Shown: one piece after another, positions 11,401-51,836 of the stretch | Layout: each line of letters begins with the position of its first letter | How positions within the stretch are numbered: the stretch's first letter is position 1 | DNA from: Macrostomum lignano | Taxonomy: Eukaryota | Direction: 5' to 3' | Assembly: GCA_002269645.1 (NCBI GenBank) | Contig: NIVC01000199.1 | Span: 1 to 64,000 of the forward strand | DNA: 64,000 nt | Program-made: the position numbers and the translations under genes | The notes under the pieces: generated by a model | Seen by the model: only the letters and a program-made list of their open reading frames with translations | The model's database searches: none | Told to the model about the DNA's origin: nothing

Positions 11401-14083
11401 AACGTTTTCACAACAGAGACGGCAGCTGCGCTCTGCACATCGGCTCCTATTGCGGCCAGGAGGTTGGCGTTCACGCCTTGCTAGAATTCGGCTGCGACCC
11501 GAACGTCACCAATCAGAACGGAGAGACTCCGCTGCACGTGGCAGCCGAGCAGCGGTTCGAGCACATGATCGACCTGCTGGTCGATGCCGAGGGAATCCGG
11601 CTTGATGCGGCTCGAAAGCTGGACAGGCGGACTGCGCTGCACATTGCCGCCAGTCACGGCTGTTGCGACGGCGTGCGAAGACTTCTGGAAGCCGGAGCTG
11701 GCATCGATGTTCGGGATCGGGACGGCAACACACCGGTGTTCCTGGCTGTCCAGAACAACAAGTGAGGATTTAGTTTACCTGATGGGTAGCTACGCTTTGC
11801 ACTTAAGTAGAAGGACGCACCAAAACAAGAGACATCTTGACAACAATTTCCCGCAGACACCGCGTAGTTCACGAGCTGGTCTCTCAGGGCGCTAATTTGA
11901 AGCTGAAGAACAACGGCTTGCAGACTTGCTTGGCATTTGCCATGAAGCAGAGCCAGGATAAAGCCATGATCAAACTGCTTGTTGAGCGCAAGTCCACCAT
12001 GGCTCCTCAGCCTGGCACTAGCAGGCAGGCAGCCGTTCGAGCTACCCGAATTGACAATGCTGCACAGAAGCAACAGTCGATGGCAGGTAGAGATCTGCCT
12101 AATCAGGGTAGATTTTTTATGACCGAGTCGCATAGTAACAAACCTGACCGGCCGAATCTCACACCCAGCAGACAGCTATGGCAGCAACACCCTCAGGTAT
12201 GGCAGTTTCTAACCGATTGTATAAATCGGTTCTGTAGTAGGTTTCGATGAGCTTAATTTATTCACTAGCTAAAGGGGGTTGTGGTAGCCCTGTGGTTTGA
12301 GCGTCGCCTGCGTCGGAGTCCCGACTTGAAAGGTTGGGGGTTCGATTCTCGACCCACTCGGAACAGTTTGTGTCCTTGAGCAAGACACTTAACTCTGCAT
12401 TGCTTCAGTTTACCCAGCTGTAAAATGGGTGCCAGCATTAGCTGGGGTAATTGAGGGTGTGTGTGGCGACCCCCCCCCCAGTCCTTGGACTGAACGCTCA
12501 ATATCTGGGGCTGAGCTGTCGGTTGCACATCTGCCCATTATTAATATTATTATGACTATCAAATCTCATAGCCGCAGACTCGACATCAACAATCGGTCAT
12601 TCCGGAAGAGCCAACAAAGCATCCTCAAGCAGCCCAGCACCCTCAGTACCACCAGCAGAAGCAGCAACAGCAGCAACAACAGCAGCACAGGCTTAGCAAC
12701 GCAAATTACTCGCGCCAACGCGACACGAAAAGCGCCGGTGTTCAAGCAACCCCGGCCGAATCAGACAAAGAAGATGATGATGAAGAGGATGCATACAGCA
12801 TGGACAGCAAAATCCGCGGCTTGTGCATCATCGTGAACAATCAGGATTACTTCAACTCCGACGATTTCAAAGAACGCGCCGGAACAGATCTGGACGAGAG
12901 GCGCTTGGAGCGACTATTTAAATCGTTGCGCTTTCACGTCAAGATATTCAAGAATCTGGACGCCAAGGATATCTACTGGAACCTCAGCAACTATGCCAAG
13001 AGCGATCACAGCGGGTATGACTGTTACGTCTGCTGCATCCTGTCTCACGGCACTCTCGGCGGGATCTACGGAGTTGATGGACGAGTGCAGAAACTGTCCG
13101 ACCTCACCGTGATGCTCAGCAGCACCAATTGTCCGTCGTTGGCCGGCAAGCCAAAACTGTTCTTTATCCAGGTGAGTTTCACAGCTGTACTGGTCTCGGC
13201 AATCCTCTACTTTCGCACGTTTAATTATTTTTCGAAAATAATGACTTGCCCTTAATTACCGCGAGTAAATATTTGAACTCGCGCGAGTGTACGACGTGGT
13301 AGTGTATCGATTTTATGTCTATGTATACTAGTTTGAGGCGGCTATTGGCTATGTCTATGGCCAAAACCTGAAATTGCTCTCTGTTCAAGTTTTGGCCTTA
13401 GACAATCGCTCCCTGTTTCTTGAGCAGCAATGGGCCCATGCTAAGGCCCGGTTCAGGGCTATGCATGGCACATCTAAGGCCCTGTTCGACACCCACCTAG
13501 ATGAGTTTCTGTGGCGCCGTTGCCACCCGCGCAACACCTTCGGCAAAATACTTTTCTGGGTGGTGCACTACTACGATGTTTAGTGCAACCGAACGTGGTA
13601 GCAAACTCGCTCATACCTGAGATGAGTCTCAAAGTCTTGAAGTTGACCGCCTGAACTTCGAAACCCATGCATCTTTAGGCTTGTCGAGGCCGCTGTCTCC
13701 AGCGAGGCGCGCACCATTTCACCGGCGGTCGGCAAGCCAGCGATCGCGACCCGGCCATGATCCCGATGGCCAACCACGAGACGGACGCGCTGTCAGCCGA
13801 CCCAGACCAAGAGTACATCCTGCCTGATCACGGCGACTTCTTGATTGGCTACGCCACGGTGGCTCAGCACATCGCCCAGCGGCACCGGGAGCAGGGCTCC
13901 GTGTACGTGCAGACCCTCTGCGACGTTATCGAACGCGGCAGGCACAAGGAGGACCTGCTCAGTCTGCTCACCAAAGTCAAATACCGCGTGTCGAAGCACG
14001 TGTTCCACAATGAAGACGGCAGTGTGTTCGTTCAGATGCCCGAAGTAAAGGAAACTCTGCGCAAGAAGATCTACTTTAAGTAG
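8462..14083 (+). CDS. Ankyrin-repeat-containing caspase, ~606 aa. Exons 8462-8592, 11417-11761, 11857-12196, 12572-13171, 13679-14083
   Basis: About 4 ankyrin repeats (DGSCALHIGS, NGETPLHVAA, DRRTALHIAA, DGNTPVFLAV), a Q-rich/acidic linker, then caspase p20 (RGLCIIVNN, YDCYVCCILSHG, KPKLFFIQ|ACRG) and p10 (DFLIGYAT, GSVYVQTLC, QMPEVKETLRKKIYF). All introns GT-AG and in phase; spliced length 1821 nt = 607 codons. Confidence 0.9.
8845..11320. repeat. 16-bp minisatellite (gcaccaaggggcttta / gcaccaaggggcgcca)n filling intron 1 of the ankyrin-caspase
   Basis: About 2.5 kb of tandem copies; source of the spurious LAPLGAGAPWCWRPLV ORFs. Confidence 0.97.
12274..12555 (+). mobile_element. tRNA-derived CORE-type SINE, copy 1 (caspase intron 3)
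   Basis: A-box-like tggtttgagcg and B-box ggttcgattc. Segment gtgtccttgagcaagacacttaactc...cagtttacccagctgtaaaatggg resembles the MIR CORE consensus. (tta)n-like tail. Confidence 0.75.
13374..13590 (+). mobile_element. Merlin/ISXO2 (IS1016-like) transposase C-terminal remnant in caspase intron 4
   Basis: WAHAKARFRAMHGTS...FDTHLDEFLWRR resembles the ISXO2-like transposase C-terminus; no DDE core present. Confidence 0.65.
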
Positions 14084-16100: not shown

Positions 16101-16423
16101 AACACAGGAAACGTATTTCAACATGTGTCAACGACCGTAAAAAATCAAAATGAGATTGGAATGAAAAACTCAAGCTAATTAACAGATATTTTCTGTATGC
16201 TTGGAACAATAAGTTGCTGGTAGAAACTAACGTACGGGAATGAGATTTAAATTGTTTAGCTGTATTTGCCTTTTAGTATCTTTTTAATAAAAACCAAAGA
16301 TAACCCAATCGATATTGAATAACTGATCGACAACTGAGGATAATTTAGACAACAAACTGGGGGATTGAATTTAGTTAGTTATATAAGTTGTTGATCGGCT
16401 TCAAGCCACACTGATGCATTCGC

Positions 16424-16782
16424 TCAATCGTGCATCGGAAACGTGAACTGGAAGTTCTTGCAGATGCAATGGCAAACACTTCGCTTAGGCGGCCCGGCCA
16501 TGGCGCAGGTCGGCACCCTGTAGCAGGAGAGCCGGCATACATTCTGCCAGTAGAGCTGCGTGTTAACTGCAAGGTGAGGCGAAATCAGATTTATTGAAAG
16601 CTACTGTAAAAGCTATTGAAAGCTACAATGTAGTATAGCAATGTCTTACTCCAGTTGATCGGCCAACGCTTTTTCATCGACAGCTGCGGCACGTCGTTCT
16701 TGCCTTTGGCGCTGTCCGCACCAGTCAGCAGACAAGCCAGCATGGCCATGGCAGCCAGGCAATAGACAGTAGCAGCCTGCAT
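16424..16782 (-). CDS. Secreted 6-cysteine propeptide A (defensin/mytilin-like), 91 aa. Exons 16782-16650 and 16566-16424
   Basis: MQAATVYCLAAMAMLACLLTGADSA (signal) KGKNDVPQLSMKKR | WPINWINTQLYWQNVCRLSCYRVPTCAMAGPPKRSVCHCICKNFQFTFPMHD*. Phase-1 intron with gtaag donor and cag acceptor. TATA-like element ~16873-16878. Confidence 0.8.
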
Positions 16783-18747
16783 GATTGCGTTGCTAGAAAT
16801 TTGGTCAGCGAGTTTTCTACAAAACTGACAAGTCTGGGGCTGAATAAAACTGTCCCCTGGCTTAAGATGTCTTTTATAGACGATGGTCGGGATTTTCACC
16901 AGCCAATCAGAAATTGTCAATGAATTCATCAACGCTTGAAACGTTCAAAGGTTATAAGAGATTAAGGCAAGATGGGAGAAACTCTAAATAAAAAACCAAG
17001 AAATTTCGGGAAATCCTGAAGAACCTGAGTGATCGGGTGGGGTGTTTCATAGATGTTACAATTAGTGACCAGTGATAGTGACAAGCGATAATTTATGAGG
17101 TTACAAGTGCTGCAGAGTTTCGTTTCACAGAATGATTTGCAAATCTAGCGACAAGGTACAAGCTCTCTGAGTAGTGACTCAAAATATGTCTATGGCCAAA
17201 TCAACGGGTGCCTCGCTCGAACCCCCCATCTCGAAAGCTTGCTTAAGATCTATGGTAAGATCTGTCTTACGCAGTCGTCCCGTGTATAGCATAAGATTAA
17301 TCGAAGGGCGTTTCTGAAAGTCATCTTTGTCGCAGCTTTTGTGATTGACAGGTGCTTCTGAATTCCTTGCAGAAGTTGCTCCTTCTTAAGGGTGAAGAAA
17401 TTCCGCACACGCTTGACCATTCTTAGTAAATCCGTGTGTAAAAATGTAACAAGTCCGTACCAAGGCGCAAGTTTACGATCTCACATAAAAAGAGCCAGAA
17501 ACATACGAAGCTATAGTTTCGAGAAACAGCTTCCTCGCATAAGTTTACGCGGTCGTAGATTTGCGCCAAATCTTACGTACGGCCCAGTTGCGAGAACTTT
17601 GATCGCAACGCCTACGCATGACCGACCCAGCTTACGTCTATTGCCAGCGCGTAAGTTGCTTTCGAGAAAGACCCCCAGGACCCTGAATATGCTCTGAAAA
17701 GTGCTCTATGAAACACTCTGTGAAGCACAACAAATCTCTGCACTCTGATCGGGGGTGCCATGCAGACTCCTCGCCTTTCACCAAAGCTCCGACACTCTTG
17801 AATCAGTGTGATACCGATACCGGAATTTTCGGGAAATGAAAAACCTAATGATTATCACAGAGAAAGCGCGGCTTGCAAATTCCGGTTGACCCCCACTGAG
17901 CTCCTGGCTCTGGAAAACTTCAGAGAATGAGCTGAGACACGGCTTCAGTGTTCAGCGGTCACTGTACCAGTGGACTTCATAGTTTCAAGCTTCAACGTAG
18001 CTATACATAGATAGTCAATCCAATCTATTTATAACCATTTTTACCGAATCTTTTCTTCAATCTTCACGTCGATATCCTAGTCTTTTAGTCAGAAATAGTC
18101 GCAAGTCTGCACAAAAACACCTGTAACCAACTGCTTGATTCGTATTCCGTAGACAACGGTGCATATAACTATAGGCCCACGCATACATTTTTATCTCAAC
18201 AAAACACCTGCGAAATCCCTCCTTTACCAGCGAGCCCGCATCAATTTTTATCCAGAGAGAGAGTAATTACCGTGGGCGTCAATTTTCAGCAATTTTCTGT
18301 TGCTTTATTTGCTTCCTCAGTGTCGGGATGTGGGTGACAGCCATTTTTTCACCTAAGCCGCCTCACAATAATGGCCACCCACGGCTTACAGTTTTTCGAC
18401 GCTGAAATCAGTAGGAACAGCCTTTCTAGATTCTTAATTTCGTATGACAAGCTGCTGCTGCTGTAACTTGCTGTAAAAACTAGCACACAAACCTTCCAGA
18501 AGCGCGCTGCAACTTAATTTTATAACCGAACTTTAATTATTCTGTCTTATACTGAATCTCAGCAACTTGCTGTCATATTGGACTTGCGGTATCTTATCTA
18601 CTGTATCATGACTGCAGCTCATATCCATACCGAACCAGTTGTGGGAGCGAATGTTCGTACATACGAGCATATAAGTACCCGAGATTTTGTACAGCCAAAG
18701 GTATGTCTACATTCTGCAACCTGTCTCGCCGTTTGAAAAAGAAAAAA

Positions 18748-20663
18748 ATGGTGAATTTCTGCAACGCATTTCCGTTGCTTATAGCGCTGAGCTGGCATTG
18801 TCGTTCCTGTGCTCTGGGTCAGAAGCTTATCGTGGAAACGGATGACGCAATCTACCGTGGTCGGGTGCTGTCTCTAAACACCCAACAGCCTCAACAGCAA
18901 ACTGTTGCCTTCCTGGGCATTCCATACGCTCAGCCGCCGATCAATGAGCTTCGATTCGCAGCCCCGTTGCCATGGAGACCATCAATTCCCGAAAGAAACT
19001 CGTCGGTCAAAGCCGAGCTAAACGCCACCAGAGCGGGACCGGCCTGCCTGCAGCGATCAGACCAGAGTGGCACCCCTAGCCGCATGTCTGAGGACTGCCT
19101 GTACCTGAATGTACACTCGCCTCCTGGAGTTCAAGGACGTCCTAAACCGGTGCTGGTCTGGCTGCACGGCGGGTTCTTTGAAACCGGTTCAGTCAGCGAC
19201 CCGGACCAGACTGGCACCTGCTTCAGTTGGGATCTGGTAGCAACGTGCCAGAGCATGCTGCTAGTTGAGGCCGCCTACCGGCTGGGAGTGTTTGGCTTCC
19301 TAGCCGAGCCGGAGCCCGCCAACGGCAATGCCGGCCTGAAGGACCAGCAGATGGCGCTGGCCTGGGTTGCTAAAAACATCGTCCACTTTGGCGGTAACAA
19401 TCGCTCAGTGACTCTGGCAGGCCTTGACGCTGGAGCTGCAGCCGTCGGATTTCACATGCTGAGTCCCGGCAGCAGGGACCACTTCCAGAGAGCCGTCTTC
19501 CTTGGCGGCAGCCCCCTTGCAGGCTGGGCTTTCGTTCGAGATCTTCAAGCGCTGCGCACGGCACACGAAGCCTTCTACAGTCTGACAGGCTGCACAGACC
19601 ATGACGAGCTGCTGAATTGCTTGCGCGCTCTTCCAGCGGACGAATTGAACTCTCACCAATCAAAGTTTAATCAGGTATTTGATCGAGTCGAGTTTCCAGT
19701 GATTGTTGATAGCCAGTTTCTACAGTCGGATCCTGTCGAGGCTTTTGAGCGGGGCAATTTCGAGTCAAAAGCAGTCATCATTGGCGTAACCAGTTTGGAA
19801 GGAATTCAGCTAGCCTACAGAGCCCTCGGGGCGTTCAACGTCACGAACCAGTGGAATTTGACCGGCCAAGTTCACTTGGATTTGCTTGCTGAAGCCTTTC
19901 GCTACGTACCCCGTTTTCCAGAGGAGCCGGCGCCTCTGGCCAGCGAGTTTCTGCAGCTGACATTAACTTCCTATCCGGGCGAAAACTTGGGCGCTCGAAA
20001 TTTCCGGCTGCTGACGAGCGCTCTATCGGAGCAGGCGGTGGTGTGCGACTCAAACCGGATGGCCGACCTTCTGCTCCAAGCTGCCAACGGGAGTTCGGAC
20101 ACATTTTTTTACCAACTCGACGAGCCTGATAGCAACACAGATGAGTACCTGGGCGCCGGGCATGGCAAAGACGCCGCCTACTTCACCGGCGAACCACTGC
20201 GACGAGCTGACTATGATACAGAGCAGAAATAATTGTCTAATTCAATGATGGCCATACTGAAAACATTTCTAGACAGTGGGAACGTCACCGTGACTGGTTG
20301 GAAGCCGACCAGTCAACAGGGACTGGAGTTTTACAGATTCAGAGCGGCAAGAAGCGCCGATTACCGCTCGGAGATGGTCAGTGGCGGATTTAAGCGACAG
20401 GACTGCCGCCTGTGGTCTGAAGTCATGCCTCGGCTGAGTGTTGCAACGCCGACTACTTCAGCTGAACCGGACGTTGACACCGAGGCAAAGTTCTGGGAGC
20501 GCTGCAACACAACGATAAACTTGGTGAGCGTCATTGTCAGGGCGTCGGCGGAGGTCTGATCCTGCTTCTGATCGTCTGCGTTGTCATTGTGGCCAGAGAT
20601 CGTTACAGTAGTTCGCACGATTTCATTGAGCTTCATCAGCGTGTCAAACCATTGGGAAAATAG
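18748..20663 (+). CDS. Intronless type-B carboxylesterase/cholinesterase-like protein, predicted non-catalytic and probably type-I membrane. Interrupted by an in-frame TAA (20230-20232) and a 1-nt frameshift near 20495
   Basis: FLGIPYAQPP, SEDCLYLNV, WLHGGFFETGS, YRLGVFGFL, NAGLKDQQMALAWV...FGG. The nucleophile elbow reads GLDAG instead of GxSxG. The frame continues after TAA (LSNSMMAILKTF). The shifted frame gives GVGGGLILLLIVCVVIVA (TM-like) plus a short tail. An upstream in-frame ATG exists at 18703. Confidence 0.8.
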
Positions 20664-27975: not shown

Positions 27976-28062
27976 TTAGTAAGAATCCATAAAAAGCAAA
28001 CATCCCTAGATAGAAAGAATCCCATACATATAGCCAAGCTTATCAAGCGCAGTAATCCTTTG

Positions 28063-29720
28063 TTTGCCAAGCGCAGTAATCATTGGTTTATCAAGTGCAG
28101 TAATCCTTGGCTTATCAAGTGAAGTAAGTTCTGGTCTATCAAGTGCAGTAATCCTTGGTTTATCAAGTGCAGTAAGTCTTGGTTTATCAAGTGCAGTAAG
28201 TCTTGGTTTATCAAGTGCAGAAATCCTTGGTTTATCAAGTGCAGAAATCCTTGTTTATAAAGTGCCGTAAGTCTTGGTTTATCCAATGCAGTAGTCCTTG
28301 GTTTATCAAGTGCAATAATCCTTGGTTAATCAAGTGCAGTAATCCTTGGTTTATGAAGTGCAGTAATCCTTGGTTTATCAAGTGCAGTAATCCTTGGTTT
28401 ATCAAGTGCAGAAATCCTTGGCTTATCAAGTGCAGTAATCCTTGGTTTATCAAGTGCAGTAACCCTTGTTTATCAAGCGCAGTAGTCCTTGGTTTATCAA
28501 GTGCAGTAATCCTTGGCTTATCGAGTGCAATAATCCTTGGCTTATCAAGTGCAATAATCCTTGGTTTATCAAGTGCAATAATCCTTGGTTTATCAAGCGC
28601 AGTAATCTTTGGCTTATCAAGTGCAATAATCCTTGGTTTATCAAGTGCAGTAATCCTTCGCCTATCAAGTGCAATAATCCTTGGTTTATCAAGCGCAGTA
28701 ATCCTTGGCTTATCGAGTGCAATAATCCTTGGCTTAGCAAGTGCAATAATCCTTGGTTTATTGAGTGCAGTAATCCTTGGCTTATCAAATGCAGTAATCC
28801 TTGGTTTATCAAGTGCAGTAATCCTTGGTTTATCAAGTGCAGTAAGTCTTGGTTAATCTAGTGCAGTAATCCTTGGTTTATCAAGTGCAGTAACCCTTTG
28901 TTTATCAAGCGCAGTAGTCCTTGGTTTATCAAGTGCAGTAATCCTTGGCTTATCGAGTGCAATAATCCTTGGCTTATCAAGTGCAATAATCCTTGGTTTA
29001 TCAAGTGCAATAATCCTTGGTTTATCAAGCGCAGTAATCTTTCGCTTATCGAGTGCAATAATCCTTGGCTTATCAAGTGCAATAATCCTTGGTTTATCAA
29101 GTGCAATAATCCTTGGTTTATCAAGCGCAGTAATCTTTGGCTTATCAAGTGCAATAATCCTTGGTTTATCAAGTGCAGTAATCCTTGGCCTATCAAGTGC
29201 AATAATCCTTGGTTTATCAAGCGCAGTAATCCTTGGCTTATCGAGTGCAATAATCCTTGCTTAGCAAGTGCAATAATCCTTGGTTTATCAAGTGCAGTAA
29301 TCCTTGGCCTATCAAGTGCAATAATCCTTGGCTTAGCAAGTGCAATAATCTTTGGTTTATCAAGTGCAGTAATCCTTGGCCTATCAAGTGCAATAATCCT
29401 TGGTTTATCAAGCGCAGTAATCCTTGGCTTATCGAGTGCAGTAATCCTTGGCCTATCAAGTGCAATAATCCTTGGTTTATCAAGCGCAGTAATCCTTGGT
29501 TTATCAAGTACAATAATCCTTGGCTTATCAAGTGCAATAATCCTTGGTTTATCAAGTGCAGTAATCCTTGGCCTATCAAGTGCAATAATCCTTGGTTTAT
29601 CAAGCGCAGTAATCCTTGGCTTATCGAGTGCAATAATCCTTGGCTTATCGAGTGCAATAATCCTTGGCTTATCCAGTGCAATAATCCTTGGTTTATCAAG
29701 TACAATAATCCTTGGCTTCT
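28063..29720. repeat. 24-bp minisatellite (ttatcaagtgcagtaatccttggt)n
   Basis: About 1.65 kb array; source of the spurious INQGLLHL ORFs. Confidence 0.97.
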
Positions 29721-33364: not shown

Positions 33365-42862
<9,498 letters not shown>

Positions 42863-44943: not shown

Positions 44944-46274
44944 TTGTCTGTATTTCGAATGTCCAGAGCGCCCTACTTTCTCGGAAGACTGAATAGTAGT
45001 ATCTTTGGCATTAAAAATATATAACTCTACGAATTTTATTCAAAACAAAAGGAAAGAAAGCGAAATCGAAACTGCTACTTGTTCTTTGAGATCATCATCA
45101 TTCTCCGTAGACTCTACTTGGAAATGCATCACATACTTGAATACATTGCCATCGTTACATTCATGTCGCAATTGCTTTGCTCCAATTGCCCTTTAATTAA
45201 TGCCAGAGTGTACTATTATTATTAATTCAACTATTTACAAACAGCTATGATAGCAGGGACAAGGAACTTTGGCAGCTGCGTATCGCAAATCGTTCTTAAT
45301 CTTAAGGCTTATTGTCTTCTCAAAGGCATTTTGGTGGCACATACGGCCTGGGCTCGCACCCCACTGCTGTAGCTGTGTTCCCAACCCGCTGTAGCTGTCT
45401 CCCCCAGCTATAGCCGACCCTCTGTTGCTACAGGACTGTAGAACGACTCATTTTAGATAAAATGGCAACTCAAATAAATCGGTTGGCCGCCCACAAAACT
45501 GACAAGGAGAATGAACTTCCATTTTTTCGTGAGCAAGCGAGCTTCGTAAATCTGTCAGAACAGAGTCTGAATGTTTTACAGAGGCTCTCTTGTGACGTCT
45601 TTTTAAAGCTGGCTACTCACGAGATCCTGAATATTTTGTGAGCCTCATCCAGGCAGGCAGATAGGTAGACAGGCGAGCAGTTGTCATCGGCAACTCAAGT
45701 AGAAAGGTCGCGATTCTCTCGCAAAATCGTGCGACTCTTACTTTGCCGAAAAATCACTAGCTACAGTAAGAACTCCCAATCTCGCTACTGAATTTTACAG
45801 GTAAACCTTGCCTCATTTATCCGGATTAAGAATTAATTGTGCTCATCATATTTCTTATTGTAAATTTGTTACGAAACAAAAAAATAATTTTTTAGCTAAA
45901 TAAGCAAGTCAAGCAGAGAAGTACAATATGCCATTTAAATGATTGCTATCTTTCACATTAACCCACTGCTTATCAATATTTACTTTGTTTATTTAAATGT
46001 CACACAAATCGAATTAAAAAATTTCCAGAGTCGCAGACTTTTAGGATCTTTTAAAAAATAAAGCCAAAAGAAACGGTCGGTCGCTGCTTGCATTAGGATG
46101 GCACGTAGCCCTCGGTTAAACATGCGCCAACTTTTCTGTTTTTAAACCCGGGGAGACTTGTTATTTTTGGTTAACAAGCATTAAAGATAAACAAATTGCG
46201 ATGGATATTATCGTAGGATTTCTCGCTGACTTCATTCATAAACGGTGTTGGCTCGAGTTGCGCATGGCAACTAC

Positions 46275-46657
46275 CTACTGCGGCCGCTCATGCATGGCTC
46301 GCAGTTTCCAATAGAAATTTGAGCAGCCGCACTGGCAGGGCAGCTGCTGGTTGCCATAGTTATACCAGCTCGACTTGCACTTGAAAGCCGCCAGACAGAA
46401 GTGCCGGCAGATCATGCGCCAGTGGGCAATCACCTTGGCTGTAATCAGGGGGGGGGGGGCAATTCAGAGATGGTACACCTGCGTCAATTTAAAAGACACA
46501 TGTAGATAAGCCAGGACTCACCGTGCGCCAACGGTATGAACGACACGCGTTTGCTAGCGATTGGAAGGTCATCGGTGTTAGTTGAATCTGCAGCGCCGTC
46601 CACTGCGACAGCGACAGCGCAGGCAAGAATGAAGCAGATGCCAACCAGGACTTGCAT
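46275..46657 (-). CDS. Secreted 6-cysteine propeptide B (paralog of 16424-16782), 99 aa. Exons 46657-46522 and 46438-46275
   Basis: MQVLVGICFILACAVAVAVDGAADSTNTDDLPIASKR | VSFIPLAHAKVIAHWRMICRHFCLAAFKCKSSWYNYGNQQLPCQCGCSNFYWKLRAMHERPQ*. Phase-1 intron with gtgag donor and polypyrimidine-cag acceptor. TATA-like element ~46762-46767. Confidence 0.82.
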
Positions 46658-47199
46658 TTCTGTCTCTATTGATCTATCGAGTAGCAGCTAAGGCCTTTGA
46701 CTGATTCCAAATTTCCAAGTTTGCGCAGCAAAATCAGGCGCAGGGCAGCACGGGCGCTCAATTTATACTATTGATTTTCATCGATGCAGCCAATGAGAGC
46801 GCTAATGGGATGGCTGAAGGACGACTAATCGCAAGTGGGAGGAGCAAAGGAGAGACTGGCGGGGGCGGACTTCAATGAGGGCATGGACAACTACAGTAGA
46901 AAGACGTTTTACTCGCAAATCGTCCAAGTCACATTTGGAGGTTGGCTTTCACATTGCAAAACGGATGACAGACTTAGGAAGTGGGTTTAGTTTCTTTGCA
47001 CCAAATTTCCTAAACCTCACCTTTACAAGTTTAGGTATATTTATTCCTGACTTATAATTTTTATTGCTTGTGCATATTACAAACTAATTTTGCTTCGTTT
47101 AAAAAATGTCCGAATTGTTATCCTTGCCACTGTAGGGTAGCAAGGCTGCCCTACGTACCCGTCTGTGCGACGCGATTCTCAACGAGCGTTTAGCTGCTG

Positions 47200-50100
47200 A
47201 TGCCGCGAGCAGGACTTCCCACAGAGAGCCACGGATGGGGTTCTGACGACTCGTCCGATGGAGGGAGCAGCCGGCGGTCCAAGAGGGGTGGCACCTCTTT
47301 GGGTGGCGCGGCTCTGGATGAGGAGATCGAGCTCACCCGACGACGCATTGAACTGCTAAGGCTGCAGAAAGAAGAGGCAGAGCTGCGACGGTCGGTGGAC
47401 AAGGCACCAGATAATCGCGGTAAGCTACGAGAATTTTTTAGCCAGTCTGCTTGCGCTGAGTCTGATAGGTGGTCCAATGATGGTGAGCTTGATGCTGCCA
47501 ATTTTGCTCCAAGCAACGCTAGAGTTTCATCTGGGCGGCTGCTCCGTATTTGCGACTTCATTGATGCCCCTGGCCAGGCTGATGAGCTTCTTTCGCAGGG
47601 TGAGACAGCAAAGCAGAATCTCAAGAGCGTTAGACCGAAATCTGTAGACTCCGTGACAGTCGGCCAATGGATTTCTGCCAATGCTAAAATCATGTATGCC
47701 ATGCTGCAATCCGGACAGCTAGCGTCTCATGACACCGATAGTGAGCCAAAAAGTCTCTTGGACTACTTGCAGCACGTTATCCACATCGGCGATCTGCTTG
47801 ATGGGGGGTACGACTGGCAAGTCCTTCTTCGTTATGATGACGACCTGCGTAAGTTCCAGCATGCACACGGCTCCAAGTGGTCCCAGCCGCCTTTGTCTCT
47901 GATCTGTAAGCACCTGACGCGTGACGGCCCCAAAGAACCTTCATAGTCGGCAAGCCAGCCAGACTGGCCGCGGTGACCGCCGACAATTCGCTTCGCGAGG
48001 CCAAGCGGTCTGTGGACTGTTTAACAGCTCCACTGGATGTCAGAGACACCTGCAACTATCTGCACTGCTGTCGGATCTGTGGTGGCTCACATGCTGCTGC
48101 TAGCCACACCAACCGTGCTAATCAAGCAAAAAACTGAAAGAAGCGCCGCATGCGGATCCCATGCCTGCCTGCCTCCGACGTCGCTCAACCTGCCTGCCTG
48201 CCTGCCTCCGACGTCGCTCAACCTGCCTGCCTGCCTGCCTCCGACGTCGCTCAACCTGCCTGCCTGCCTGCCTCCGACGTCGCTCAACCTGCCTGCCTGC
48301 CTGCCTCCGACGTCGCTCAACCTGCCTGCCTGCCTGCCTCCGACGTCGCTCAACCTGCCTGCCTGCCTGCCTCCGACGTCGCTCAACCTGCCTGCCTGCC
48401 TGCTTCCGACGTCGCTCAACCTGCCTGCCTGCCTGCCTCCGACATCGCGCAACCTGCCTGCTTGCCTGCCTCCGACGCTGCCAAACCTGCCTGCTTGTCC
48501 GCCTCCATAATCGATCCTGCCTGCCGGCTAGCAAACGGCTGTCCTCCGGTCGATCCTCGTCGGAGCGGTGACCTCGTCGTGGCTGCTTGGGAGGAGCGTC
48601 TTCGTGGAGATCCGGACGAGAATTTCCTTGTCGACAGTCTTCGTGCTGGTTTTTCTTTAATCGACGACGGTTCTAAAGTGCCCGCCTTTGAGTCTGATAA
48701 CTACCCGTCGGTGGAGGAGTTCAGACAGGAGGTCGAATGCCTGCTGCTTGAGGAAATTCGCAGGGGTAGAGTCGTGGTGGTTCCGGATCCGCCTAGCTTG
48801 GTGAGCCCGCTTGGGGCTATTCGCCAATCATCTGGTGGCGTCAGACTCATTCACGACTGCTCCGTCCCCCATAATGCGTCCCTCAACGACTGTTTCACCG
48901 CCGACCGCAAGCTTCGTTTTGCATCTGTCGAGGATTTCGTGCGTCTTCTTCGGCCAGGTCACTTCATGGCCAAAGTTGATATTGCTTCGGCGTATCGGTC
49001 CATCGCCTGCCACCCCAGCTGCTGGCCTCTTCTTGGTCTGAAGTTTAAGTTTTCCGGCGACGATCACGATACTTACATGGAAGACCGACGCCTTCCCATG
49101 GGTTCTGCCGGCTCTGTTCCTAGCTTTCACCGTGTCTCTCAAGCCATTCGTCGCTTCATGGTCAAGGACGGCTATACCGCTGTAGTTAACTATCTGGATG
49201 ACTTTGCTGTCACTGCCGCTACCTACAGAGATTGCTTCAAGGCCTATGACCACCTGCTAAGTCTTCTGGAGCACCTTGGCTTCGAGGTCAACCGTAAAAA
49301 GTGCACCCCGCCTTGTCAGGACATTGTCTTCCTCGGTATCCAGACAGACATCGGAGTCATGTCTCTGCCTCCGGAAAAGCTGCAGGAGCTGCGTCAGTTG
49401 CTCACTGATTGTCTTGCCGCTAGACAAGTCTCTGCTTCTTTCTTGCGTCGCCTCACCGGAAAGTTGAGCTGGTTTTGTCAGGTGCAGAGACAAATTCGCA
49501 TGTTCCTTCGCCCCATCATCGAGTTTACCGAGAAGCTTAGTCGTGAAAATCGTCGAGTGCGCATTTGCGAGAGTTTGCGGCATCTTTTACAATTGTGGGA
49601 ATCGGCCGTCAGGTGTTATCACGATCGTCTTATCTGGCCCATCTTCTCCGATGCTTTGGCCGTGGAAACTGACGCCTGCATCAGTGGCGGCGCTGCAATT
49701 CTCAGCAGTTGCTGCTTCCGCGATTGGTTTTTCGTTTATTTTTCCTCGGACTTGGATGGCCGTTTGGCCGATCTGCACATCAATTACAAGGAGGCGGCTA
49801 TCGCTCCTCTCACTCTGCTGCGGTTTCGTGACCAGCTTCATCAGGCCCAGGTGGTTTTCTACAGCGACAACCAAGCAGCTGTCGGCATGTTCAACCGGGG
49901 CTCTGCTAAGTGTCCTATCGTGAATGATCTTCTGATGCAGGCTGGGCTTGTCTGCATGCAGCAGCAGATCACTTTCAAGGTCTTTTACATGCCCGGTTGC
50001 CGCCAGTTCCTCGCTGACCCCGCCTCTCGTCTCCTGACGGGAGACGCTGCTCTGATTGATTTTGCCTCTCGTTTCTACGGTCATTTGTTGATTGATCCCT

Positions 50101-51192
50101 CTGAATTTGCTTCGCATGCGCTGGGTCCTGCTTCCGCTTCCACCCTGTTTTTCAGGTGCCGCCTCCTTTGGGCTGCCAACCGAGCTGCTCCCTCTAGTTC
50201 GCGCCGCCTTCGCACCGGCGTCGCTGCGGTCGCTGGAAAGCAAATGGAGGATGTGGAGCGCTTTCTGCAGCGAGTCAAAGATCAACGCTCTGAAGCCGAC
50301 TCCGACTCAGATTTGCCAGTTCATCAACTTCCTCATGCACCATCGCTTGTCGCGGCAATCGAGCCTGCAGGCATACGTCAGCTCGATCGCCACTCTGTTG
50401 CGACTCAGCGACTCTCCGGTTACGACAGACTCTGGACTCGTGCGCTTGGCTCTTCGAGGTGCGAAGCGGCTGCTGGCCGCAACGCCCACTTGCCGCAAGG
50501 CTGCGGTGGGGCCGAGTCATCTTCTGCGACTGCGGCGCTGCCTGCAGCTGCAGACCGGCATTGGAGCTTCTCTGTGGAGCCTCATCTTAGCCGGCTGGTG
50601 GGCGATGCTGCGGGCGGCCAATCTCTGCTCTGTCAGCCGGGCAAACGTCGGCACGGCGGTGCTGATCAGCGATCTTCGCCTGGGCGTCAAGGAGGCTCGG
50701 ATTTCTGTTCGCCTATCCAAGACGAATCAATTCGGCGAGCACCGTCATGTCGTTCTTCTGCCCTGCATCTGCAAGAGTGCGACTGCTCCGCTGTGTCCGC
50801 TTTGTGCGCTCCATCATCATTTCAGCCGGAACTCTCTAGACATTGCCCCTCTTTCGCAGCCTCTGTTCTCTACCCTGCAGTCAGCAGGAAGCTGGATGAG
50901 CTTAACTGCAGCGCATGTCCGGCGCGAGTTGTCCCAGCTTTTTTACCAGGCTGGCCTTCCAAGAGACCGCTTTTCAATGCACAGCCTGCGCCGAGGCGGC
51001 GCCAGCTTTGCCAGGCGTTCAGGCATCGCGAGCGAGGATATCAAAGCCATTGGCGACTGGAAGAGCGATGCGGTTCATCTCTATGCGGGCCGGCAGCCGC
51101 AGGTGGCCAGCCGTACTGTTCGTCGCATCGGGCGGCGGTTCAGGCTGCGTTCTAACTGTTTAGCTGTTGAACTGTGTCTGTGGGGGCGTTAG
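47200..51192 (+). mobile_element. Tyrosine-recombinase retrotransposon (DIRS order, Ngaro-like). gag-like ORF1 47200-~48137 (frameshifted), RT-RNase H ORF 48150-51155, YR ORF 50092-51192
   Basis: RT: FMAKVDIASAY, LPMG, NYLDDF, FLG. RNase H: ETDAC, INYKEA, YSDNQAAV, ADPASR. YR: LRAANL, SKTNQFG, HSLRRGGA, GDWKSDAVHLY. ORF1 C-terminal C..FN...C...C.Y.H.C..C...H zinc finger. Overlapping ORFs, no methyltransferase domain. Confidence 0.92.
48165..48500 (+). repeat. 33-bp in-frame minisatellite at the start of the retroelement RT ORF (ACLPASDVAQP x ~10)
   Basis: cctgcctgcctccgacgtcgctcaacctgcctg repeats. Confidence 0.95.
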
Positions 51193-51682: not shown

Positions 51683-51836
51683 GGCACCAGGGGCTTTAGC
51701 AACAGGGGCTTTAGCAACAGGGGCTTTAGCACCAGGGGCTTTAGCACCAGGGGCTTTAGCACCAGGGGCTTTAACACCAGGGGCTTTAGCACCAGGGCTT
51801 TAGCACCAGGGGCTTTAGCACCAGGGGCTTTAGCAC
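51683..51836. repeat. 15-bp minisatellite (agcaccaggggcttt)n, related to the 16-bp array at 8845-11320
   Basis: Unit differs by one nt from gcaccaaggggcttta. Confidence 0.9.

What the first reader, a model, noticed from the sequence alone, without database searches (positions are those of the whole stretch)
46275..46657. Second, diverged paralog (propeptide B) 30 kb away confirms a gene family
Seen: also absent from the ORF track. It has the same orientation, an MQ start, a signal peptide, an acidic propiece ending in KR, and a phase-1 intron a few codons after the KR. The mature core matches peptide A: HWRMICRHFC vs YWQNVCRLSC, five residues to the third Cys, then CQCGCSNFYW vs CHCICKNFQF (C-x3-C-x5-C-x13-C-x-C-x-C). 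Cys and aromatic residues are conserved while the rest has diverged. That pattern argues for selection on the protein and fits rapidly diversifying defence peptides (inference).
Basis: partly seen in the sequence, partly recalled or inferred. Interest (0 to 1): 0.82.

Follow-up and report, generated by a model that had tools for sequence, protein, structure and literature searches.

The report
Secreted six-cysteine peptide gene, flatworm
This is a real, transcribed two-exon gene of the flatworm Macrostomum lignano for a small secreted cationic peptide with six cysteines; it has one old paralog 30 kb away and no relatives elsewhere, and its function (defence is the leading guess) is untested.

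Summary
Window 46275-46657 (minus strand) is the complete coding region of a two-exon gene. It encodes 99 aa: an 18-aa signal peptide, an acidic spacer ending in KR, and a 62-aa cationic peptide with the framework C-x3-C-x5-C-x13-C-x-C-x-C.

The window is Macrostomum lignano contig NIVC01000199.1:1-64000. The protein is GenBank PAA88211.1 (Mlig016917.g2), from an annotation built on RNA evidence.

The gene at 16424-16782 is a true but old paralog (26% identity). The two share the Cys framework (central loop x10 in A), a phase-1 intron in the same alignment column, a CCAAT-TATA promoter module and a 3' motif.

An exhaustive HMM search of 1.84 billion proteins found only these two genes, so the "family" is two paralogs plus recent polyploid copies.

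There is no Pfam, PDB-sequence or Foldseek match, and the AlphaFold models are of low confidence.

Peptide B is already listed, untested, as flatworm AMP-like peptide group 61 in the supplement of Irvine et al. 2023.

"Rapidly diversifying" is not supported: homeolog dN/dS is about 0.2, with no change in the Cys core.

Defence is the best guess (about 0.4). A signalling peptide or a gland/reproductive secretion remain open. An 8-residue somatostatin-like match fails the family's defining features.

The parts
46762..46794 (-). Promoter module of gene B: ATTGGCTG (an inverted CCAAT box, CAGCCAAT on the other strand), 19 nt, then TATAAA. It lies about 105 nt upstream of the ATG.
   Evidence: The pattern ATTGGCTG-N15-25-TATAAA matches only here and at gene A; 0 matches are expected. 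It is identical in the homeolog locus L001. The 400 bp upstream are 100% conserved between homeologs.
46658..46717 (-). 5' UTR of gene B (at least 60 nt).
   Evidence: The 5'-partial GenBank model of copy g1 (P0004, 119 aa) reads 20 codons upstream of the ATG. In the window an in-frame stop lies 12 codons upstream of the ATG.
46604..46657 (-). Signal peptide of B (codons 1-18, MQVLVGICFILACAVAVA).
   Evidence: Translation. Irvine et al. 2023 S5 File lists signal peptide 'Y' (SignalP 4.1) with the product starting at VDGAAD.
46547..46603 (-). Acidic spacer/pro-piece of B (VDGAADSTNTDDLPIASKR), ending in the dibasic site K36-R37 (46547-46552).
   Evidence: Translation. The stretch from D20 (DGAADSTNTDDLPIASKR) has pI 4.14 and charge -2.2. 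The KR aligns with the KKR of A. Cleavage is inferred, not shown.
46522..46657 (-). Exon 1 of gene B (136 nt of coding sequence).
   Evidence: The spliced product equals PAA88211.1.
46439..46521 (-). Intron of gene B: 83 bp, GTGAGT...C12 tract...TTACAG, phase 1, in codon 46.
   Evidence: It falls in the same alignment column and phase as the intron of A.
46275..46438 (-). Exon 2 of gene B, including the stop TAG at 46275-46277. It encodes the Cys-rich core.
46323..46409 (-). Six-cysteine core of B: CRHFCLAAFKCKSSWYNYGNQQLPCQCGC (C-x3-C-x5-C-x13-C-x-C-x-C).
   Evidence: Regex hit. The framework gives 2 hits in the window and 0 in 200 shuffles.
46038..46052 (-). Shared 3' motif AAAAGATCCTAAAAG, about 225 nt after the stop; probably close to the poly(A) site.
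   Evidence: Only two matches in the window, both downstream of A and B on the gene strand; 0.05 expected. Homeolog identity is perfect from exon 2 to 46012 and breaks down from 46011 on.
16873..16907 (-). Promoter module of paralog A: ATTGGCTG, 21 nt, then TATAAA.
   Evidence: It is conserved in homeolog L002.
16650..16782 (-). Exon 1 of paralog A: signal peptide and basic spacer ending in KKR.
   Evidence: The 91-aa product is identical to P0003.
16567..16649 (-). Intron of paralog A: 83 bp, GTAAGA...TTGCAG, phase 1, in codon 45.
   Evidence: The homeolog copy has an 11-bp deletion here, so the equal length of the A and B introns is a coincidence.
16424..16566 (-). Exon 2 of paralog A, with the core CRLSCYRVPTCAMAGPPKRSVCHCIC (16460-16537; C-x3-C-x5-C-x10-C-x-C-x-C).
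16270..16284 (-). Shared 3' motif AAAAGATACTAAAAG downstream of A.

Best explanation
Window 46275-46657 (minus strand) is the coding region of Mlig016917.g2 (GenBank PAA88211.1), a transcribed two-exon gene of the free-living flatworm Macrostomum lignano.

Shown:
- The gene model and its splice, and transcript-based annotation of the gene model.
- An N-terminal signal peptide.
- A 99-aa precursor made of an 18-aa signal peptide, a 19-aa acidic spacer ending in KR, and a 62-aa peptide with charge about +7, 16% aromatic residues and six cysteines.
- Paralogy with the gene at 16424-16782.
- Restriction of the family to this species in the libraries searched.

Inferred:
- The precursor enters the secretory pathway and is cut after (S/K)-K-R by a kexin/PC-type convertase.
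- The six cysteines form three disulfides. These staple the N-terminal helix (C-x3-C-x5-C) to the following strand (C-x-C-x-C), giving a compact, protease-resistant mini-protein of about 6-7 kDa.
- The peptide acts outside the cell by binding a membrane or surface target. The most likely role is a host-defence (antimicrobial or toxin-like) effector of a secretory or epithelial cell type.
- A and B are co-regulated through a shared CCAAT-TATA promoter module.

Confidence is about 0.9 for the gene, secretion and paralogy. It is about 0.4 for the defence function, and that is the figure given below.
For: Gene and expression:
- The spliced 99-aa product is identical to PAA88211.1. There are two further near-identical copies, g1 and g3.
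- L003 shows that the window equals NIVC01000199.1:1-64000.
- The GenBank annotation is the RNA-seq-derived Mlig_RNA_3_7_DV1 coregenes set (PMC5730564).

Secretion:
- SignalP 4.1 was positive in PMC10414684 S5.

Paralogy:
- BLASTP E = 8e-6.
- Shuffle z = 9.1 for the full precursors and 4.6 for the mature parts.
- The Cys framework occurs twice in the window and in 0 of 200 shuffles.
- The phase-1 intron sits 10 codons before Cys1 in both genes.
- The shared promoter module has 0 matches expected by chance.
- The shared 3' motif has 0.05 expected.
- Both motifs are conserved in the homeolog loci.

Constraint on the peptide:
- The B core has dN = 0 between homeologs; overall omega is 0.21.
- A's exons are identical between homeologs while its intron carries 8 substitutions and an 11-bp indel.

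Defence-like properties:
- Charge is +7.0 for mature B and +3.9 for mature A; aromatic content is 15-16%.
- The pro-piece of B is anionic.
- 6-7 of 11 AMP predictors were positive, and B is listed as flatworm AMP-like peptide group 61.
- The family is taxon-restricted.

Fold:
- The AF2 models of both paralogs start with a helix of about 18 residues spanning C1-C2, followed by beta-strands.
Against: - There is no expression site, induction data or activity data for either gene.
- Nine papers' supplements and the full-text library gave only the one computational listing.
- The AMP-predictor support (55-64%) is barely above the screen's 50% cut-off. The authors themselves say such tools should not be used alone.
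- The rows I could read in that screen list only the 81-aa product without a KR cut, so ProP apparently did not call the site.
- The pro-piece of A is basic, so charge neutralisation by the pro-piece is not a family feature.
- There are only two paralogs and no sign of diversifying selection.
- The AF2 models have low confidence (pLDDT 68 and 60), and Foldseek finds no defensin- or toxin-like fold.
- There is no Pfam, NCBIfam or PDB-sequence match.
- The copy of A in this window has no gene model of its own. Its expression is inferred from an identical annotated homeolog.
Confidence: 0.4

Rival explanations
1. Endogenous signalling peptide (neuropeptide or peptide hormone). The precursor is sorted to regulated secretory granules of neurons or endocrine-like cells. 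A PC2-type convertase cuts it at the dibasic site, and the disulfide-rich peptide activates a receptor.
For: - The architecture is signal peptide, short spacer, KR, then a single C-terminal peptide.
- The KR is conserved at the aligned position while the spacers have diverged.
- The peptide core is under constraint between homeologs.
- Each paralog is a low-copy gene rather than an expanded cluster.
- The same criteria are used to nominate Cys-containing signalling peptides in other spiralians (PMC10501145).
- B carries GCSNFYWK, against somatostatin GCKNFFWK. Pfam PF03002 scores 17.8 bits, and 0 of 20000 shuffles reach the score.
Against: - No homolog was found in any other animal in a search of 1.84e9 proteins, whereas signalling peptides of this size are usually conserved across species.
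- There is no amidation signal.
- At 52-62 residues with three disulfides, it is large for a neuropeptide.
- The somatostatin match is below Pfam's gathering score, is absent in A, and lacks the loop-closing Cys.
- No neural expression data exist.
Confidence: 0.25
2. Structural or reproductive gland secretion. The peptide would be a component of seminal fluid (prostate), of shell, cement or adhesive gland secretion, or of rhabdites or mucus. Such components are typically taxon-restricted, small, secreted and Cys-rich in M. lignano.
For: - It is an orphan secreted Cys-rich product.
- The TATA plus CCAAT promoter suits a strongly expressed, cell-type-specific gene.
- General knowledge of the species: many lineage-specific secreted transcripts are prostate- or gland-limited (titles and abstracts, e.g. 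PMC5977470, PMC7336406).
Against: - The gene IDs do not appear in the held supplementary tables of the reproduction, positional or germline papers that I could search. Those files may be cut or may use other identifiers.
- Reproductive proteins in this genus are reported to evolve fast, whereas the homeolog comparison here shows constraint.
- The dibasic processing site is not needed for a structural secretion.
Confidence: 0.2
3. Not a functional protein-coding gene. The similarity between A and B would be a chance resemblance of two Cys-rich ORFs, or the transcripts would be non-coding.
For: With the cysteines held fixed, the other residues are not significantly similar (z = 1.5). No homolog exists outside the species.
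Against: - The framework never occurs in shuffles.
- Intron position and phase are identical.
- The promoter and 3' motifs are shared.
- Both ORFs are intact in every polyploid copy.
- The core shows synonymous change only, and A's exons are identical next to a variable intron.
- B was also predicted in the ML2 assembly's MAKER annotation.
Confidence: 0.03

Closest known systems
Flatworm AMP-like peptide group 61 (fAMP-LP-61) in S5 File of Irvine et al. 2023, PLoS Pathog (PMC10414684)
   Same: It is this very protein. The S5 rows I could read list BOX15_Mlig016917g3 and two ML2 gene models, which are copies that differ from the window's g2 at 3-4 residues; g2 itself was not seen in those rows. 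The listing gives a positive signal peptide and 54.5-63.6% of 11 AMP predictors positive.
   Different: - That study treated the 81-aa product after signal-peptide removal and dropped the group for being over 60 aa.
- It did not test any Cys-rich peptide.
- In the part of the file I could search, it does not link B to paralog A.
- It does not describe the intron, the KR site or the promoter.
Cysteine-stabilised alpha/beta (CS-alpha-beta) defence peptides and toxins (invertebrate defensins, mussel mytilin-type peptides)
   Same: - Small, cationic and secreted.
- A C-x3-C motif in a predicted helix, and a C-x-C(-x-C) motif downstream in a predicted strand region.
- The mytilin comparison (C-x-C-x-C after a 10-residue loop) is from my own memory and is only a lead.
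   Different: - No profile match to any Pfam defensin or toxin family.
- No PDB sequence hit and no Foldseek hit.
- There is no cysteine ahead of the helix motif, and there are three rather than two potential helix-strand staples.
- Homology searches by others found no CS-alpha-beta peptides in flatworm genomes (PMC10414684).
Mytilus CRP-I and conotoxin-type prepropeptides (taxon-restricted six-Cys peptides with a dibasic pro-site)
   Same: - Architecture of signal peptide, propeptide, KR/RR site, then a six-Cys mature peptide.
- Taxon-restricted and functionally uncharacterised (PMC10138031).
   Different: - The Cys array there is C-C-CC-C-C (knottin).
- Those families are large clusters with hypervariable mature regions and conserved signal and pro regions.
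- Here there are two genes, no CC pair, and the signal and pro regions are as diverged as the mature part.
Somatostatin / SSRP family (Pfam PF03002)
   Same: - B has G-C-S-N-F-Y-W-K against somatostatin-14 G-C-K-N-F-F-W-K, 9 residues from the C-terminus.
- A keeps C-K-N-F.
   Different: - The score is below Pfam's gathering threshold (17.8 and 13.8 bits against 20.3).
- No cysteine follows the WK, so there is no disulfide loop.
- A lacks WK.
- B has no processing site directly upstream of the motif. The criteria are from PMC9048919.

Membership tests
CS-alpha-beta defensin/toxin superfamily | C-x3-C motif (helix) plus C-x-C motif (strand) in one small secreted peptide | tested here: met
   Both paralogs have C-x3-C ... 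C-x-C-x-C. This is met at the motif level only.
CS-alpha-beta defensin/toxin superfamily | Significant sequence-profile match to a curated defensin, toxin or macin family | tested here: not met
   Pfam at E <= 10 gave nothing relevant for the precursors or the mature peptides. A PDB sequence profile search gave 0 hits at E <= 10.
CS-alpha-beta defensin/toxin superfamily | Fold: an alpha-helix packed on an antiparallel beta-sheet | tested here: inconclusive
   AF2 gives helix plus 2-3 strands for both, but at pLDDT 68 and 60. Foldseek against the PDB has a best E of about 3 and no defensin or toxin hit.
CS-alpha-beta defensin/toxin superfamily | Disulfide connectivity linking the helix C-x3-C to the strand C-x-C | not testable with these tools
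   This needs disulfide mapping or an NMR/crystal structure.
Somatostatin / SSRP family | Score at or above the Pfam PF03002 gathering threshold (20.3 bits) | tested here: not met
   17.8 bits for the C-terminal 20-mer of B and 13.8 bits for the mature g1 variant. There was no hit for A or for the mature form of g3, which differs from the window's g2 at one residue (L43S).
Somatostatin / SSRP family | W-K motif enclosed in a disulfide loop formed by two flanking cysteines | tested here: not met
   B has Y-W-K but no Cys downstream. A has Q-F-T in that place. The criterion is from PMC9048919.
Somatostatin / SSRP family | [quoted passage not shown] | tested here: inconclusive
   The motif is C-terminal in both. 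A has KR 18 residues from its end, and B has no basic site after K36-R37 until the motif.
WSC domain (UniRef automatic name for two B copies) | Match to the WSC domain profile | tested here: not met
   UniRef names P0005 and P0006 'WSC domain-containing protein'. Pfam finds no WSC match even at E <= 10.
Secreted prepropeptide (generic kind: toxin, AMP or hormone precursor) | N-terminal signal peptide | tested here: met
   A hydrophobic N-terminus in both. SignalP 4.1 was positive for B, with the cut after residue 18, in PMC10414684 S5.
Secreted prepropeptide (generic kind: toxin, AMP or hormone precursor) | Conserved dibasic convertase site between the spacer and the Cys-rich peptide, actually cleaved | tested here: inconclusive
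   The KR of B and the KKR of A align. The published rows I could read list only the uncut 81-aa form, so ProP apparently did not call the site. Cleavage needs mass spectrometry.
Antimicrobial peptide (functional class) | Positive in more than 50% of AMP prediction tools (the operational criterion of Irvine et al. 2023) | tested here: met
   Taken from the paper's supplement rather than recomputed: 54.5-63.6% of 11 tools for the B copies. A was not found there.
Antimicrobial peptide (functional class) | Measured antimicrobial activity, or induction by infection | not testable with these tools
   No experimental data were found.

The most novel reading that the evidence does not exclude
The two genes could encode a flatworm-specific peptide-hormone scaffold. 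In it, a somatostatin-like pharmacophore (G-C-x-N-F-Y-W-K in B, C-K-N-F in A) would be presented on a three-disulfide mini-protein instead of the usual single disulfide loop. That would be either a very divergent relative or an independent mimic of the somatostatin/SSRP system in a phylum where that system has not been described.
Probability: 0.04. Interest if true: 0.7.

Novelty: new member of a known kind. Interest (0 to 1): 0.3.

Why it matters
Flatworms are reported to lack the canonical lophotrochozoan antimicrobial peptide families: big defensins, CS-alpha-beta peptides and myticalins (PMC10414684). What replaces them is unknown.

A transcribed, secreted, cationic three-disulfide peptide pair in M. 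lignano is therefore a concrete candidate. M. lignano is a genetically tractable flatworm with transgenesis, RNAi and in situ hybridisation available. In that species the idea of lineage-specific Cys-rich effectors can be tested directly.

The shared promoter module of about 35 bp could also serve as a handle for reporter constructs.

Still, orphan Cys-rich secreted peptides are common in invertebrate genomes, and this protein is already in GenBank and in a published candidate list. No function is shown, so the finding is a modest lead rather than a discovery.

Tried and rejected
1. Family assignment by sequence. Pfam, NCBIfam and a PDB sequence profile search gave nothing apart from a sub-threshold somatostatin match.
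2. Family assignment by fold. Two AF2 models had low confidence. Foldseek against the PDB gave only noise.
3. More family members. The HMM search of 1.84e9 representatives, two word-index searches and a profile search found only A, B and mis-predicted fragments of B (P0002, P0008). tblastn and a regex found no third copy in the window or in the homeolog loci.
4. Segmental duplication. There is no DNA similarity between the 9-kb stretches around A (12-21 kb) and B (42-51 kb). The duplication is old, and only short promoter and 3' motifs remain.
5. The equal 83-bp introns as a homology signal. I rejected this: the homeolog copies have 81 bp and about 73 bp.
6. The UniRef name 'WSC domain-containing protein' is not supported.
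7. The somatostatin resemblance fails the family's defining features.
8. Expression site. The IDs Mlig016917 and Mlig007017 and the peptide strings were not found in the full-text library. They were also not found in the held supplements of PMC5730564, PMC5946080, PMC7336406, PMC12896417 and PMC5816591. PMC11398382, PMC10786194 and PMC12435804 have no supplements held.
9. Doppelganger-related peptide families of spiralians have one or two disulfides and do not match.
10. An RNA gene or another feature on either strand. There is no Rfam hit in the window, and only short ORFs lie on the opposite strand.
Full report
**1. What is at the coordinates**

On the minus strand an ATG at 46657 opens exon 1 (46657-46522). 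A GTGAGT...C12...TTACAG intron of 83 bp follows (46521-46439, phase 1, inside codon 46). Exon 2 runs from 46438 to the TAG at 46277-46275.

The spliced product is 99 aa: MQVLVGICFILACAVAVAVDGAADSTNTDDLPIASKRVSFIPLAHAKVIAHWRMICRHFCLAAFKCKSSWYNYGNQQLPCQCGCSNFYWKLRAMHERPQ.

The finding's coordinates are exactly ATG to stop. Each exon on its own is an ORF of 57 or 52 aa. This is why a 60-aa ORF list does not show the gene.

**2. Identity of the sequence**

The protein is 97% identical to 'hypothetical protein BOX15_Mlig016917g3 [Macrostomum lignano]'. It is 100% identical to PAA88211.1, Mlig016917.g2.

The contig look-up returns NIVC01000199.1 positions 36275-56657, and that sequence is the exact reverse complement of window 36275-56657. 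So the window is the first 64 kb of that contig of assembly Mlig_3_7.

That GenBank annotation is the Mlig_RNA_3_7_DV1 'coregenes' set. It was built from RNA-seq, a de novo transcriptome and experimentally mapped transcript ends, not from ab initio prediction (PMC5730564). The splice I derived from the DNA reproduces the annotated protein exactly. The gene model therefore rests on transcript evidence and agrees with my splice.

Three near-identical copies (g1-g3) exist, as expected for this neopolyploid genome.

**3. The paralog**

Peptide A lies at 16782-16424 on the same strand, 29,875 bp away.
- Exon 1 is 16782-16650.
- The intron is 16649-16567 (GTAAGA...TTGCAG, phase 1, codon 45).
- Exon 2 is 16566-16424.
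- The product is 91 aa: MQAATVYCLAAMAMLACLLTGADSAKGKNDVPQLSMKKRWPINWINTQLYWQNVCRLSCYRVPTCAMAGPPKRSVCHCICKNFQFTFPMHD. It is identical to a database protein.

GenBank annotates a copy of A on another contig (NIVC01001264.1, Mlig007017.g1). That model is a 140-aa ORF that simply extends upstream through the promoter. The copy in this window has no gene model on record.

Evidence that A and B are homologous and not a chance pair:
- BLASTP gives E = 8e-6.
- Shuffles give z = 9.1 for the full precursors and z = 4.6 for the mature parts.
- The framework C-x3-C-x5-C-x(8-15)-C-x-C-x-C occurs twice in the six-frame translation and in 0 of 200 block shuffles.
- The intron falls in the same alignment column and phase, 10 codons before Cys1.
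- The promoter module ATTGGCTG-N19/21-TATAAA is found only at these two genes, with 0 expected.
- The 3' motif AAAAGATNCTAAAAG is found only downstream of these two genes, with 0.05 expected.
- Both motifs are conserved in the homeologous loci.

Caveats:
- With the cysteines fixed, the other residues are not significantly similar (z = 1.5).
- The central loop is x13 in B but x10 in A.
- The spacer of A is basic, not acidic.
- The flanking DNA shows no similarity, so the duplication is old.
- The equal intron length of 83 bp is a coincidence, because the homeolog copies differ in length.

**4. Size of the family**

An exhaustive HMMER search with the exon-2 alignment against 1.84 billion representative proteins returned only B, A and a frameshifted fragment of B. 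Word-indexed searches of 5.8 billion clusters gave the same result. No third copy exists in the window or in the three homeolog loci.

In these libraries the family is therefore two genes in one species. Other Macrostomum species are not represented there, so 'species-specific' is not proven.

**5. Selection**

B copy g2 (the window) and copy g3 (L001) differ at 7 coding positions. Three are non-synonymous (D30N, P32S, L43S) and all lie before the Cys core. Four are synonymous.

The NG86 estimate is dN 0.013, dS 0.063, omega 0.21. For the core (codons 47-99) dN is 0.

A's two exons are identical between homeologs, while its intron carries 8 substitutions and an 11-bp indel. However, the 1.5 kb upstream are also identical.

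The numbers are small. They point to constraint, not to diversification. The A/B comparison is too diverged for dN/dS.

**6. What the protein looks like**

- Signal peptide: 18 aa in B. SignalP 4.1 was positive in PMC10414684.
- Spacer: ends in KR (B) or KKR (A) at aligned positions.
- Mature peptides, if cut there: 62 aa with charge +7.0 and pI 9.5 (B); 52 aa with charge +3.9 and pI 8.9 (A). Both have 15-16% aromatic residues.
- AlphaFold2 gives for B a helix (residues 2-18 of exon 2, carrying C1 and C2), a hairpin and a C-terminal helix, at pLDDT 68.
- For A it gives a helix (2-19) followed by three strands, at pLDDT 60.
- The two models agree only on the N-terminal helix followed by strands.
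- Foldseek against the PDB gives nothing.
- Pfam, NCBIfam and PDB sequence searches give nothing significant.
- The UniRef label 'WSC domain-containing protein' is unsupported.

**7. Literature**

The only trace of these genes that I found is in Irvine et al. 2023 (PMC10414684). Its S5 File lists the B copies as flatworm AMP-like peptide group 61. The entries show a positive signal peptide and 6-7 of 11 AMP predictors positive. The group was removed from the prioritised set because the 81-aa product exceeds 60 aa.

That paper tested no Cys-rich peptide. It reports that flatworms lack big defensins, CS-alpha-beta peptides and myticalins by homology search.

No expression or functional information was found in the full-text library or in the searchable supplements of nine M. 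lignano papers.

**8. Mechanism**

Shown: a transcribed gene; a secretory signal; a conserved six-Cys scaffold; constraint on the core; shared regulatory motifs.

Inferred:
- A kexin/PC-type convertase cleaves after KR.
- Three disulfides tie the helix (C-x3-C-x5-C) to the C-x-C-x-C segment.
- The peptide acts outside the cell.

I rank the possible functions as follows.
- Host-defence or toxin-like effector, about 0.4. It is cationic, aromatic, disulfide-stabilised and taxon-restricted, AMP predictors are positive, and B has an anionic pro-piece.
- Signalling peptide, about 0.25. The dibasic site is conserved, there is a single C-terminal peptide, and the core is constrained.
- Gland or reproductive secretion, about 0.2.
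- A non-functional ORF is very unlikely, about 0.03.

**9. A lead that failed its test**

B's C-terminal segment G-C-S-N-F-Y-W-K resembles the somatostatin-14 core G-C-K-N-F-F-W-K.
- Pfam PF03002 scores 17.8 bits (E = 0.0033) for the 20-residue fragment and 13.8 bits for the mature g1 variant. The gathering score is 20.3.
- 0 of 20000 shuffles of B reach the score. A keeps only C-K-N-F (p = 0.06).

The family is defined by a W-K motif inside a disulfide loop at the C-terminus of the precursor (PMC9048919). Here no cysteine follows the W-K, and A lacks W-K altogether.

I therefore do not file the genes as somatostatin-like. I keep this only as the low-probability novel reading.

**10. Context**

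- A sits between a caspase/ankyrin gene (caspase-domain ORF 12800-13255) and a carboxylesterase ORF (18703-20232).
- B sits between a retroelement ORF with a reverse-transcriptase domain (48150-51155) and a Na/Ca-exchanger gene downstream.
- The window contains many tandem-repeat arrays and no Rfam family.
- None of this bears on function.

**11. Verdict**

The gene model and the paralogy are sound. The 'rapidly diversifying defence family' reading is only partly supported.

The protein is already in GenBank and in a published candidate list, and no function is shown. It is a new, very small, taxon-restricted family within the well-known kind 'secreted cysteine-rich prepropeptides'. I score interest at 0.3.

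Noticed in passing
window 46302-46325 (minus strand; residues 83-90 of B) and 16448-16459 (CKNF of A): B carries G-C-S-N-F-Y-W-K against the somatostatin-14 core G-C-K-N-F-F-W-K. Pfam PF03002 scores 17.8 bits, below the gathering score of 20.3. 0 of 20000 shuffles reach the score. A keeps only C-K-N-F. No loop-closing cysteine follows.
   Followed up: yes
window 16424-16929 (minus strand): The copy of gene A in this contig has no gene model on record. The homeolog on NIVC01001264.1 is annotated with a 140-aa ORF that starts 147 nt upstream of the MQ codon and reads through the CCAAT and TATA elements, so that model has no N-terminal signal peptide. The 91-aa MQ start fits the paralog better.
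   Followed up: partly
window 46439-46657 versus L001; window 16567-16649 versus L002: Divergence between polyploid copies is oddly local.
- B has 9 substitutions plus a 2-bp indel in exon 1 and the intron (219 bp). It has none in the 400 bp upstream and none in the 416 bp from 46427 to 46012.
- A's intron has 8 substitutions and an 11-bp indel, while both exons and the 1.5 kb upstream are identical.
The cause is not explained. Repeat slippage in A's intron or patchy gene conversion are possibilities.
   Followed up: partly
window 28040-29715 (+): A 24-bp tandem array of 70 copies (87% matches). It reads in frame as KCNNPWF/IKCSNPW repeats and produces ORFs of 217 and 274 aa. I did not examine whether it is a repetitive coding gene or just a satellite.
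   Followed up: no
window 48150-51155 (+), with a 33-bp tandem array at 48162-48506: A 1001-aa ORF with a reverse-transcriptase domain (RVT_1, E = 9.5e-10) lies 1.5 kb upstream of gene B. Its N-terminus is a 10.5-copy 33-bp repeat encoding RSTCLPACLRR, which gives spurious Colipase-like and Mucin-like Pfam hits. It is probably a retroelement. It is present in the homeolog locus too.
   Followed up: partly
window 39213-41169, 41898-42667, 37967-38468 and 36576-36964 (minus-strand gene region): Large 17-bp, 4-bp and 23-bp tandem arrays lie inside the span of the Na/Ca-exchanger gene downstream of B (annotated as a 623-aa product in L003). Within the 17-bp arrays the alignment to the homeolog L001 drops to about 85-90% identity with many off-register matches.
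   Followed up: no
window 8860-11314: A 16-bp tandem array of 153 copies (GCACCAAGGGGCTTTA, 92% matches) accounts for the GC peak of the window (0.60). A related 15-bp array lies at 51684-51836.
   Followed up: no
window 12800-13255 (+) and 18703-20232 (+): The neighbours of gene A are a caspase-domain ORF and a 509-aa single-ORF carboxylesterase.
- Caspase ORF: Peptidase_C14, E = 1.6e-30. The homeolog contig has an annotated 599-aa ankyrin-repeat plus caspase protein.
- Carboxylesterase: COesterase, E = 3.4e-90.
   Followed up: no
databases (P0002, P0008): Two UniRef entries from the older ML2 assembly (A0A1I8FK52, 70 aa; A0A1I8FKI6, 46 aa) are frame-shifted mis-predictions of gene B. UniRef's name 'WSC domain-containing protein' for two correct copies has no support from Pfam.
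   Followed up: yes
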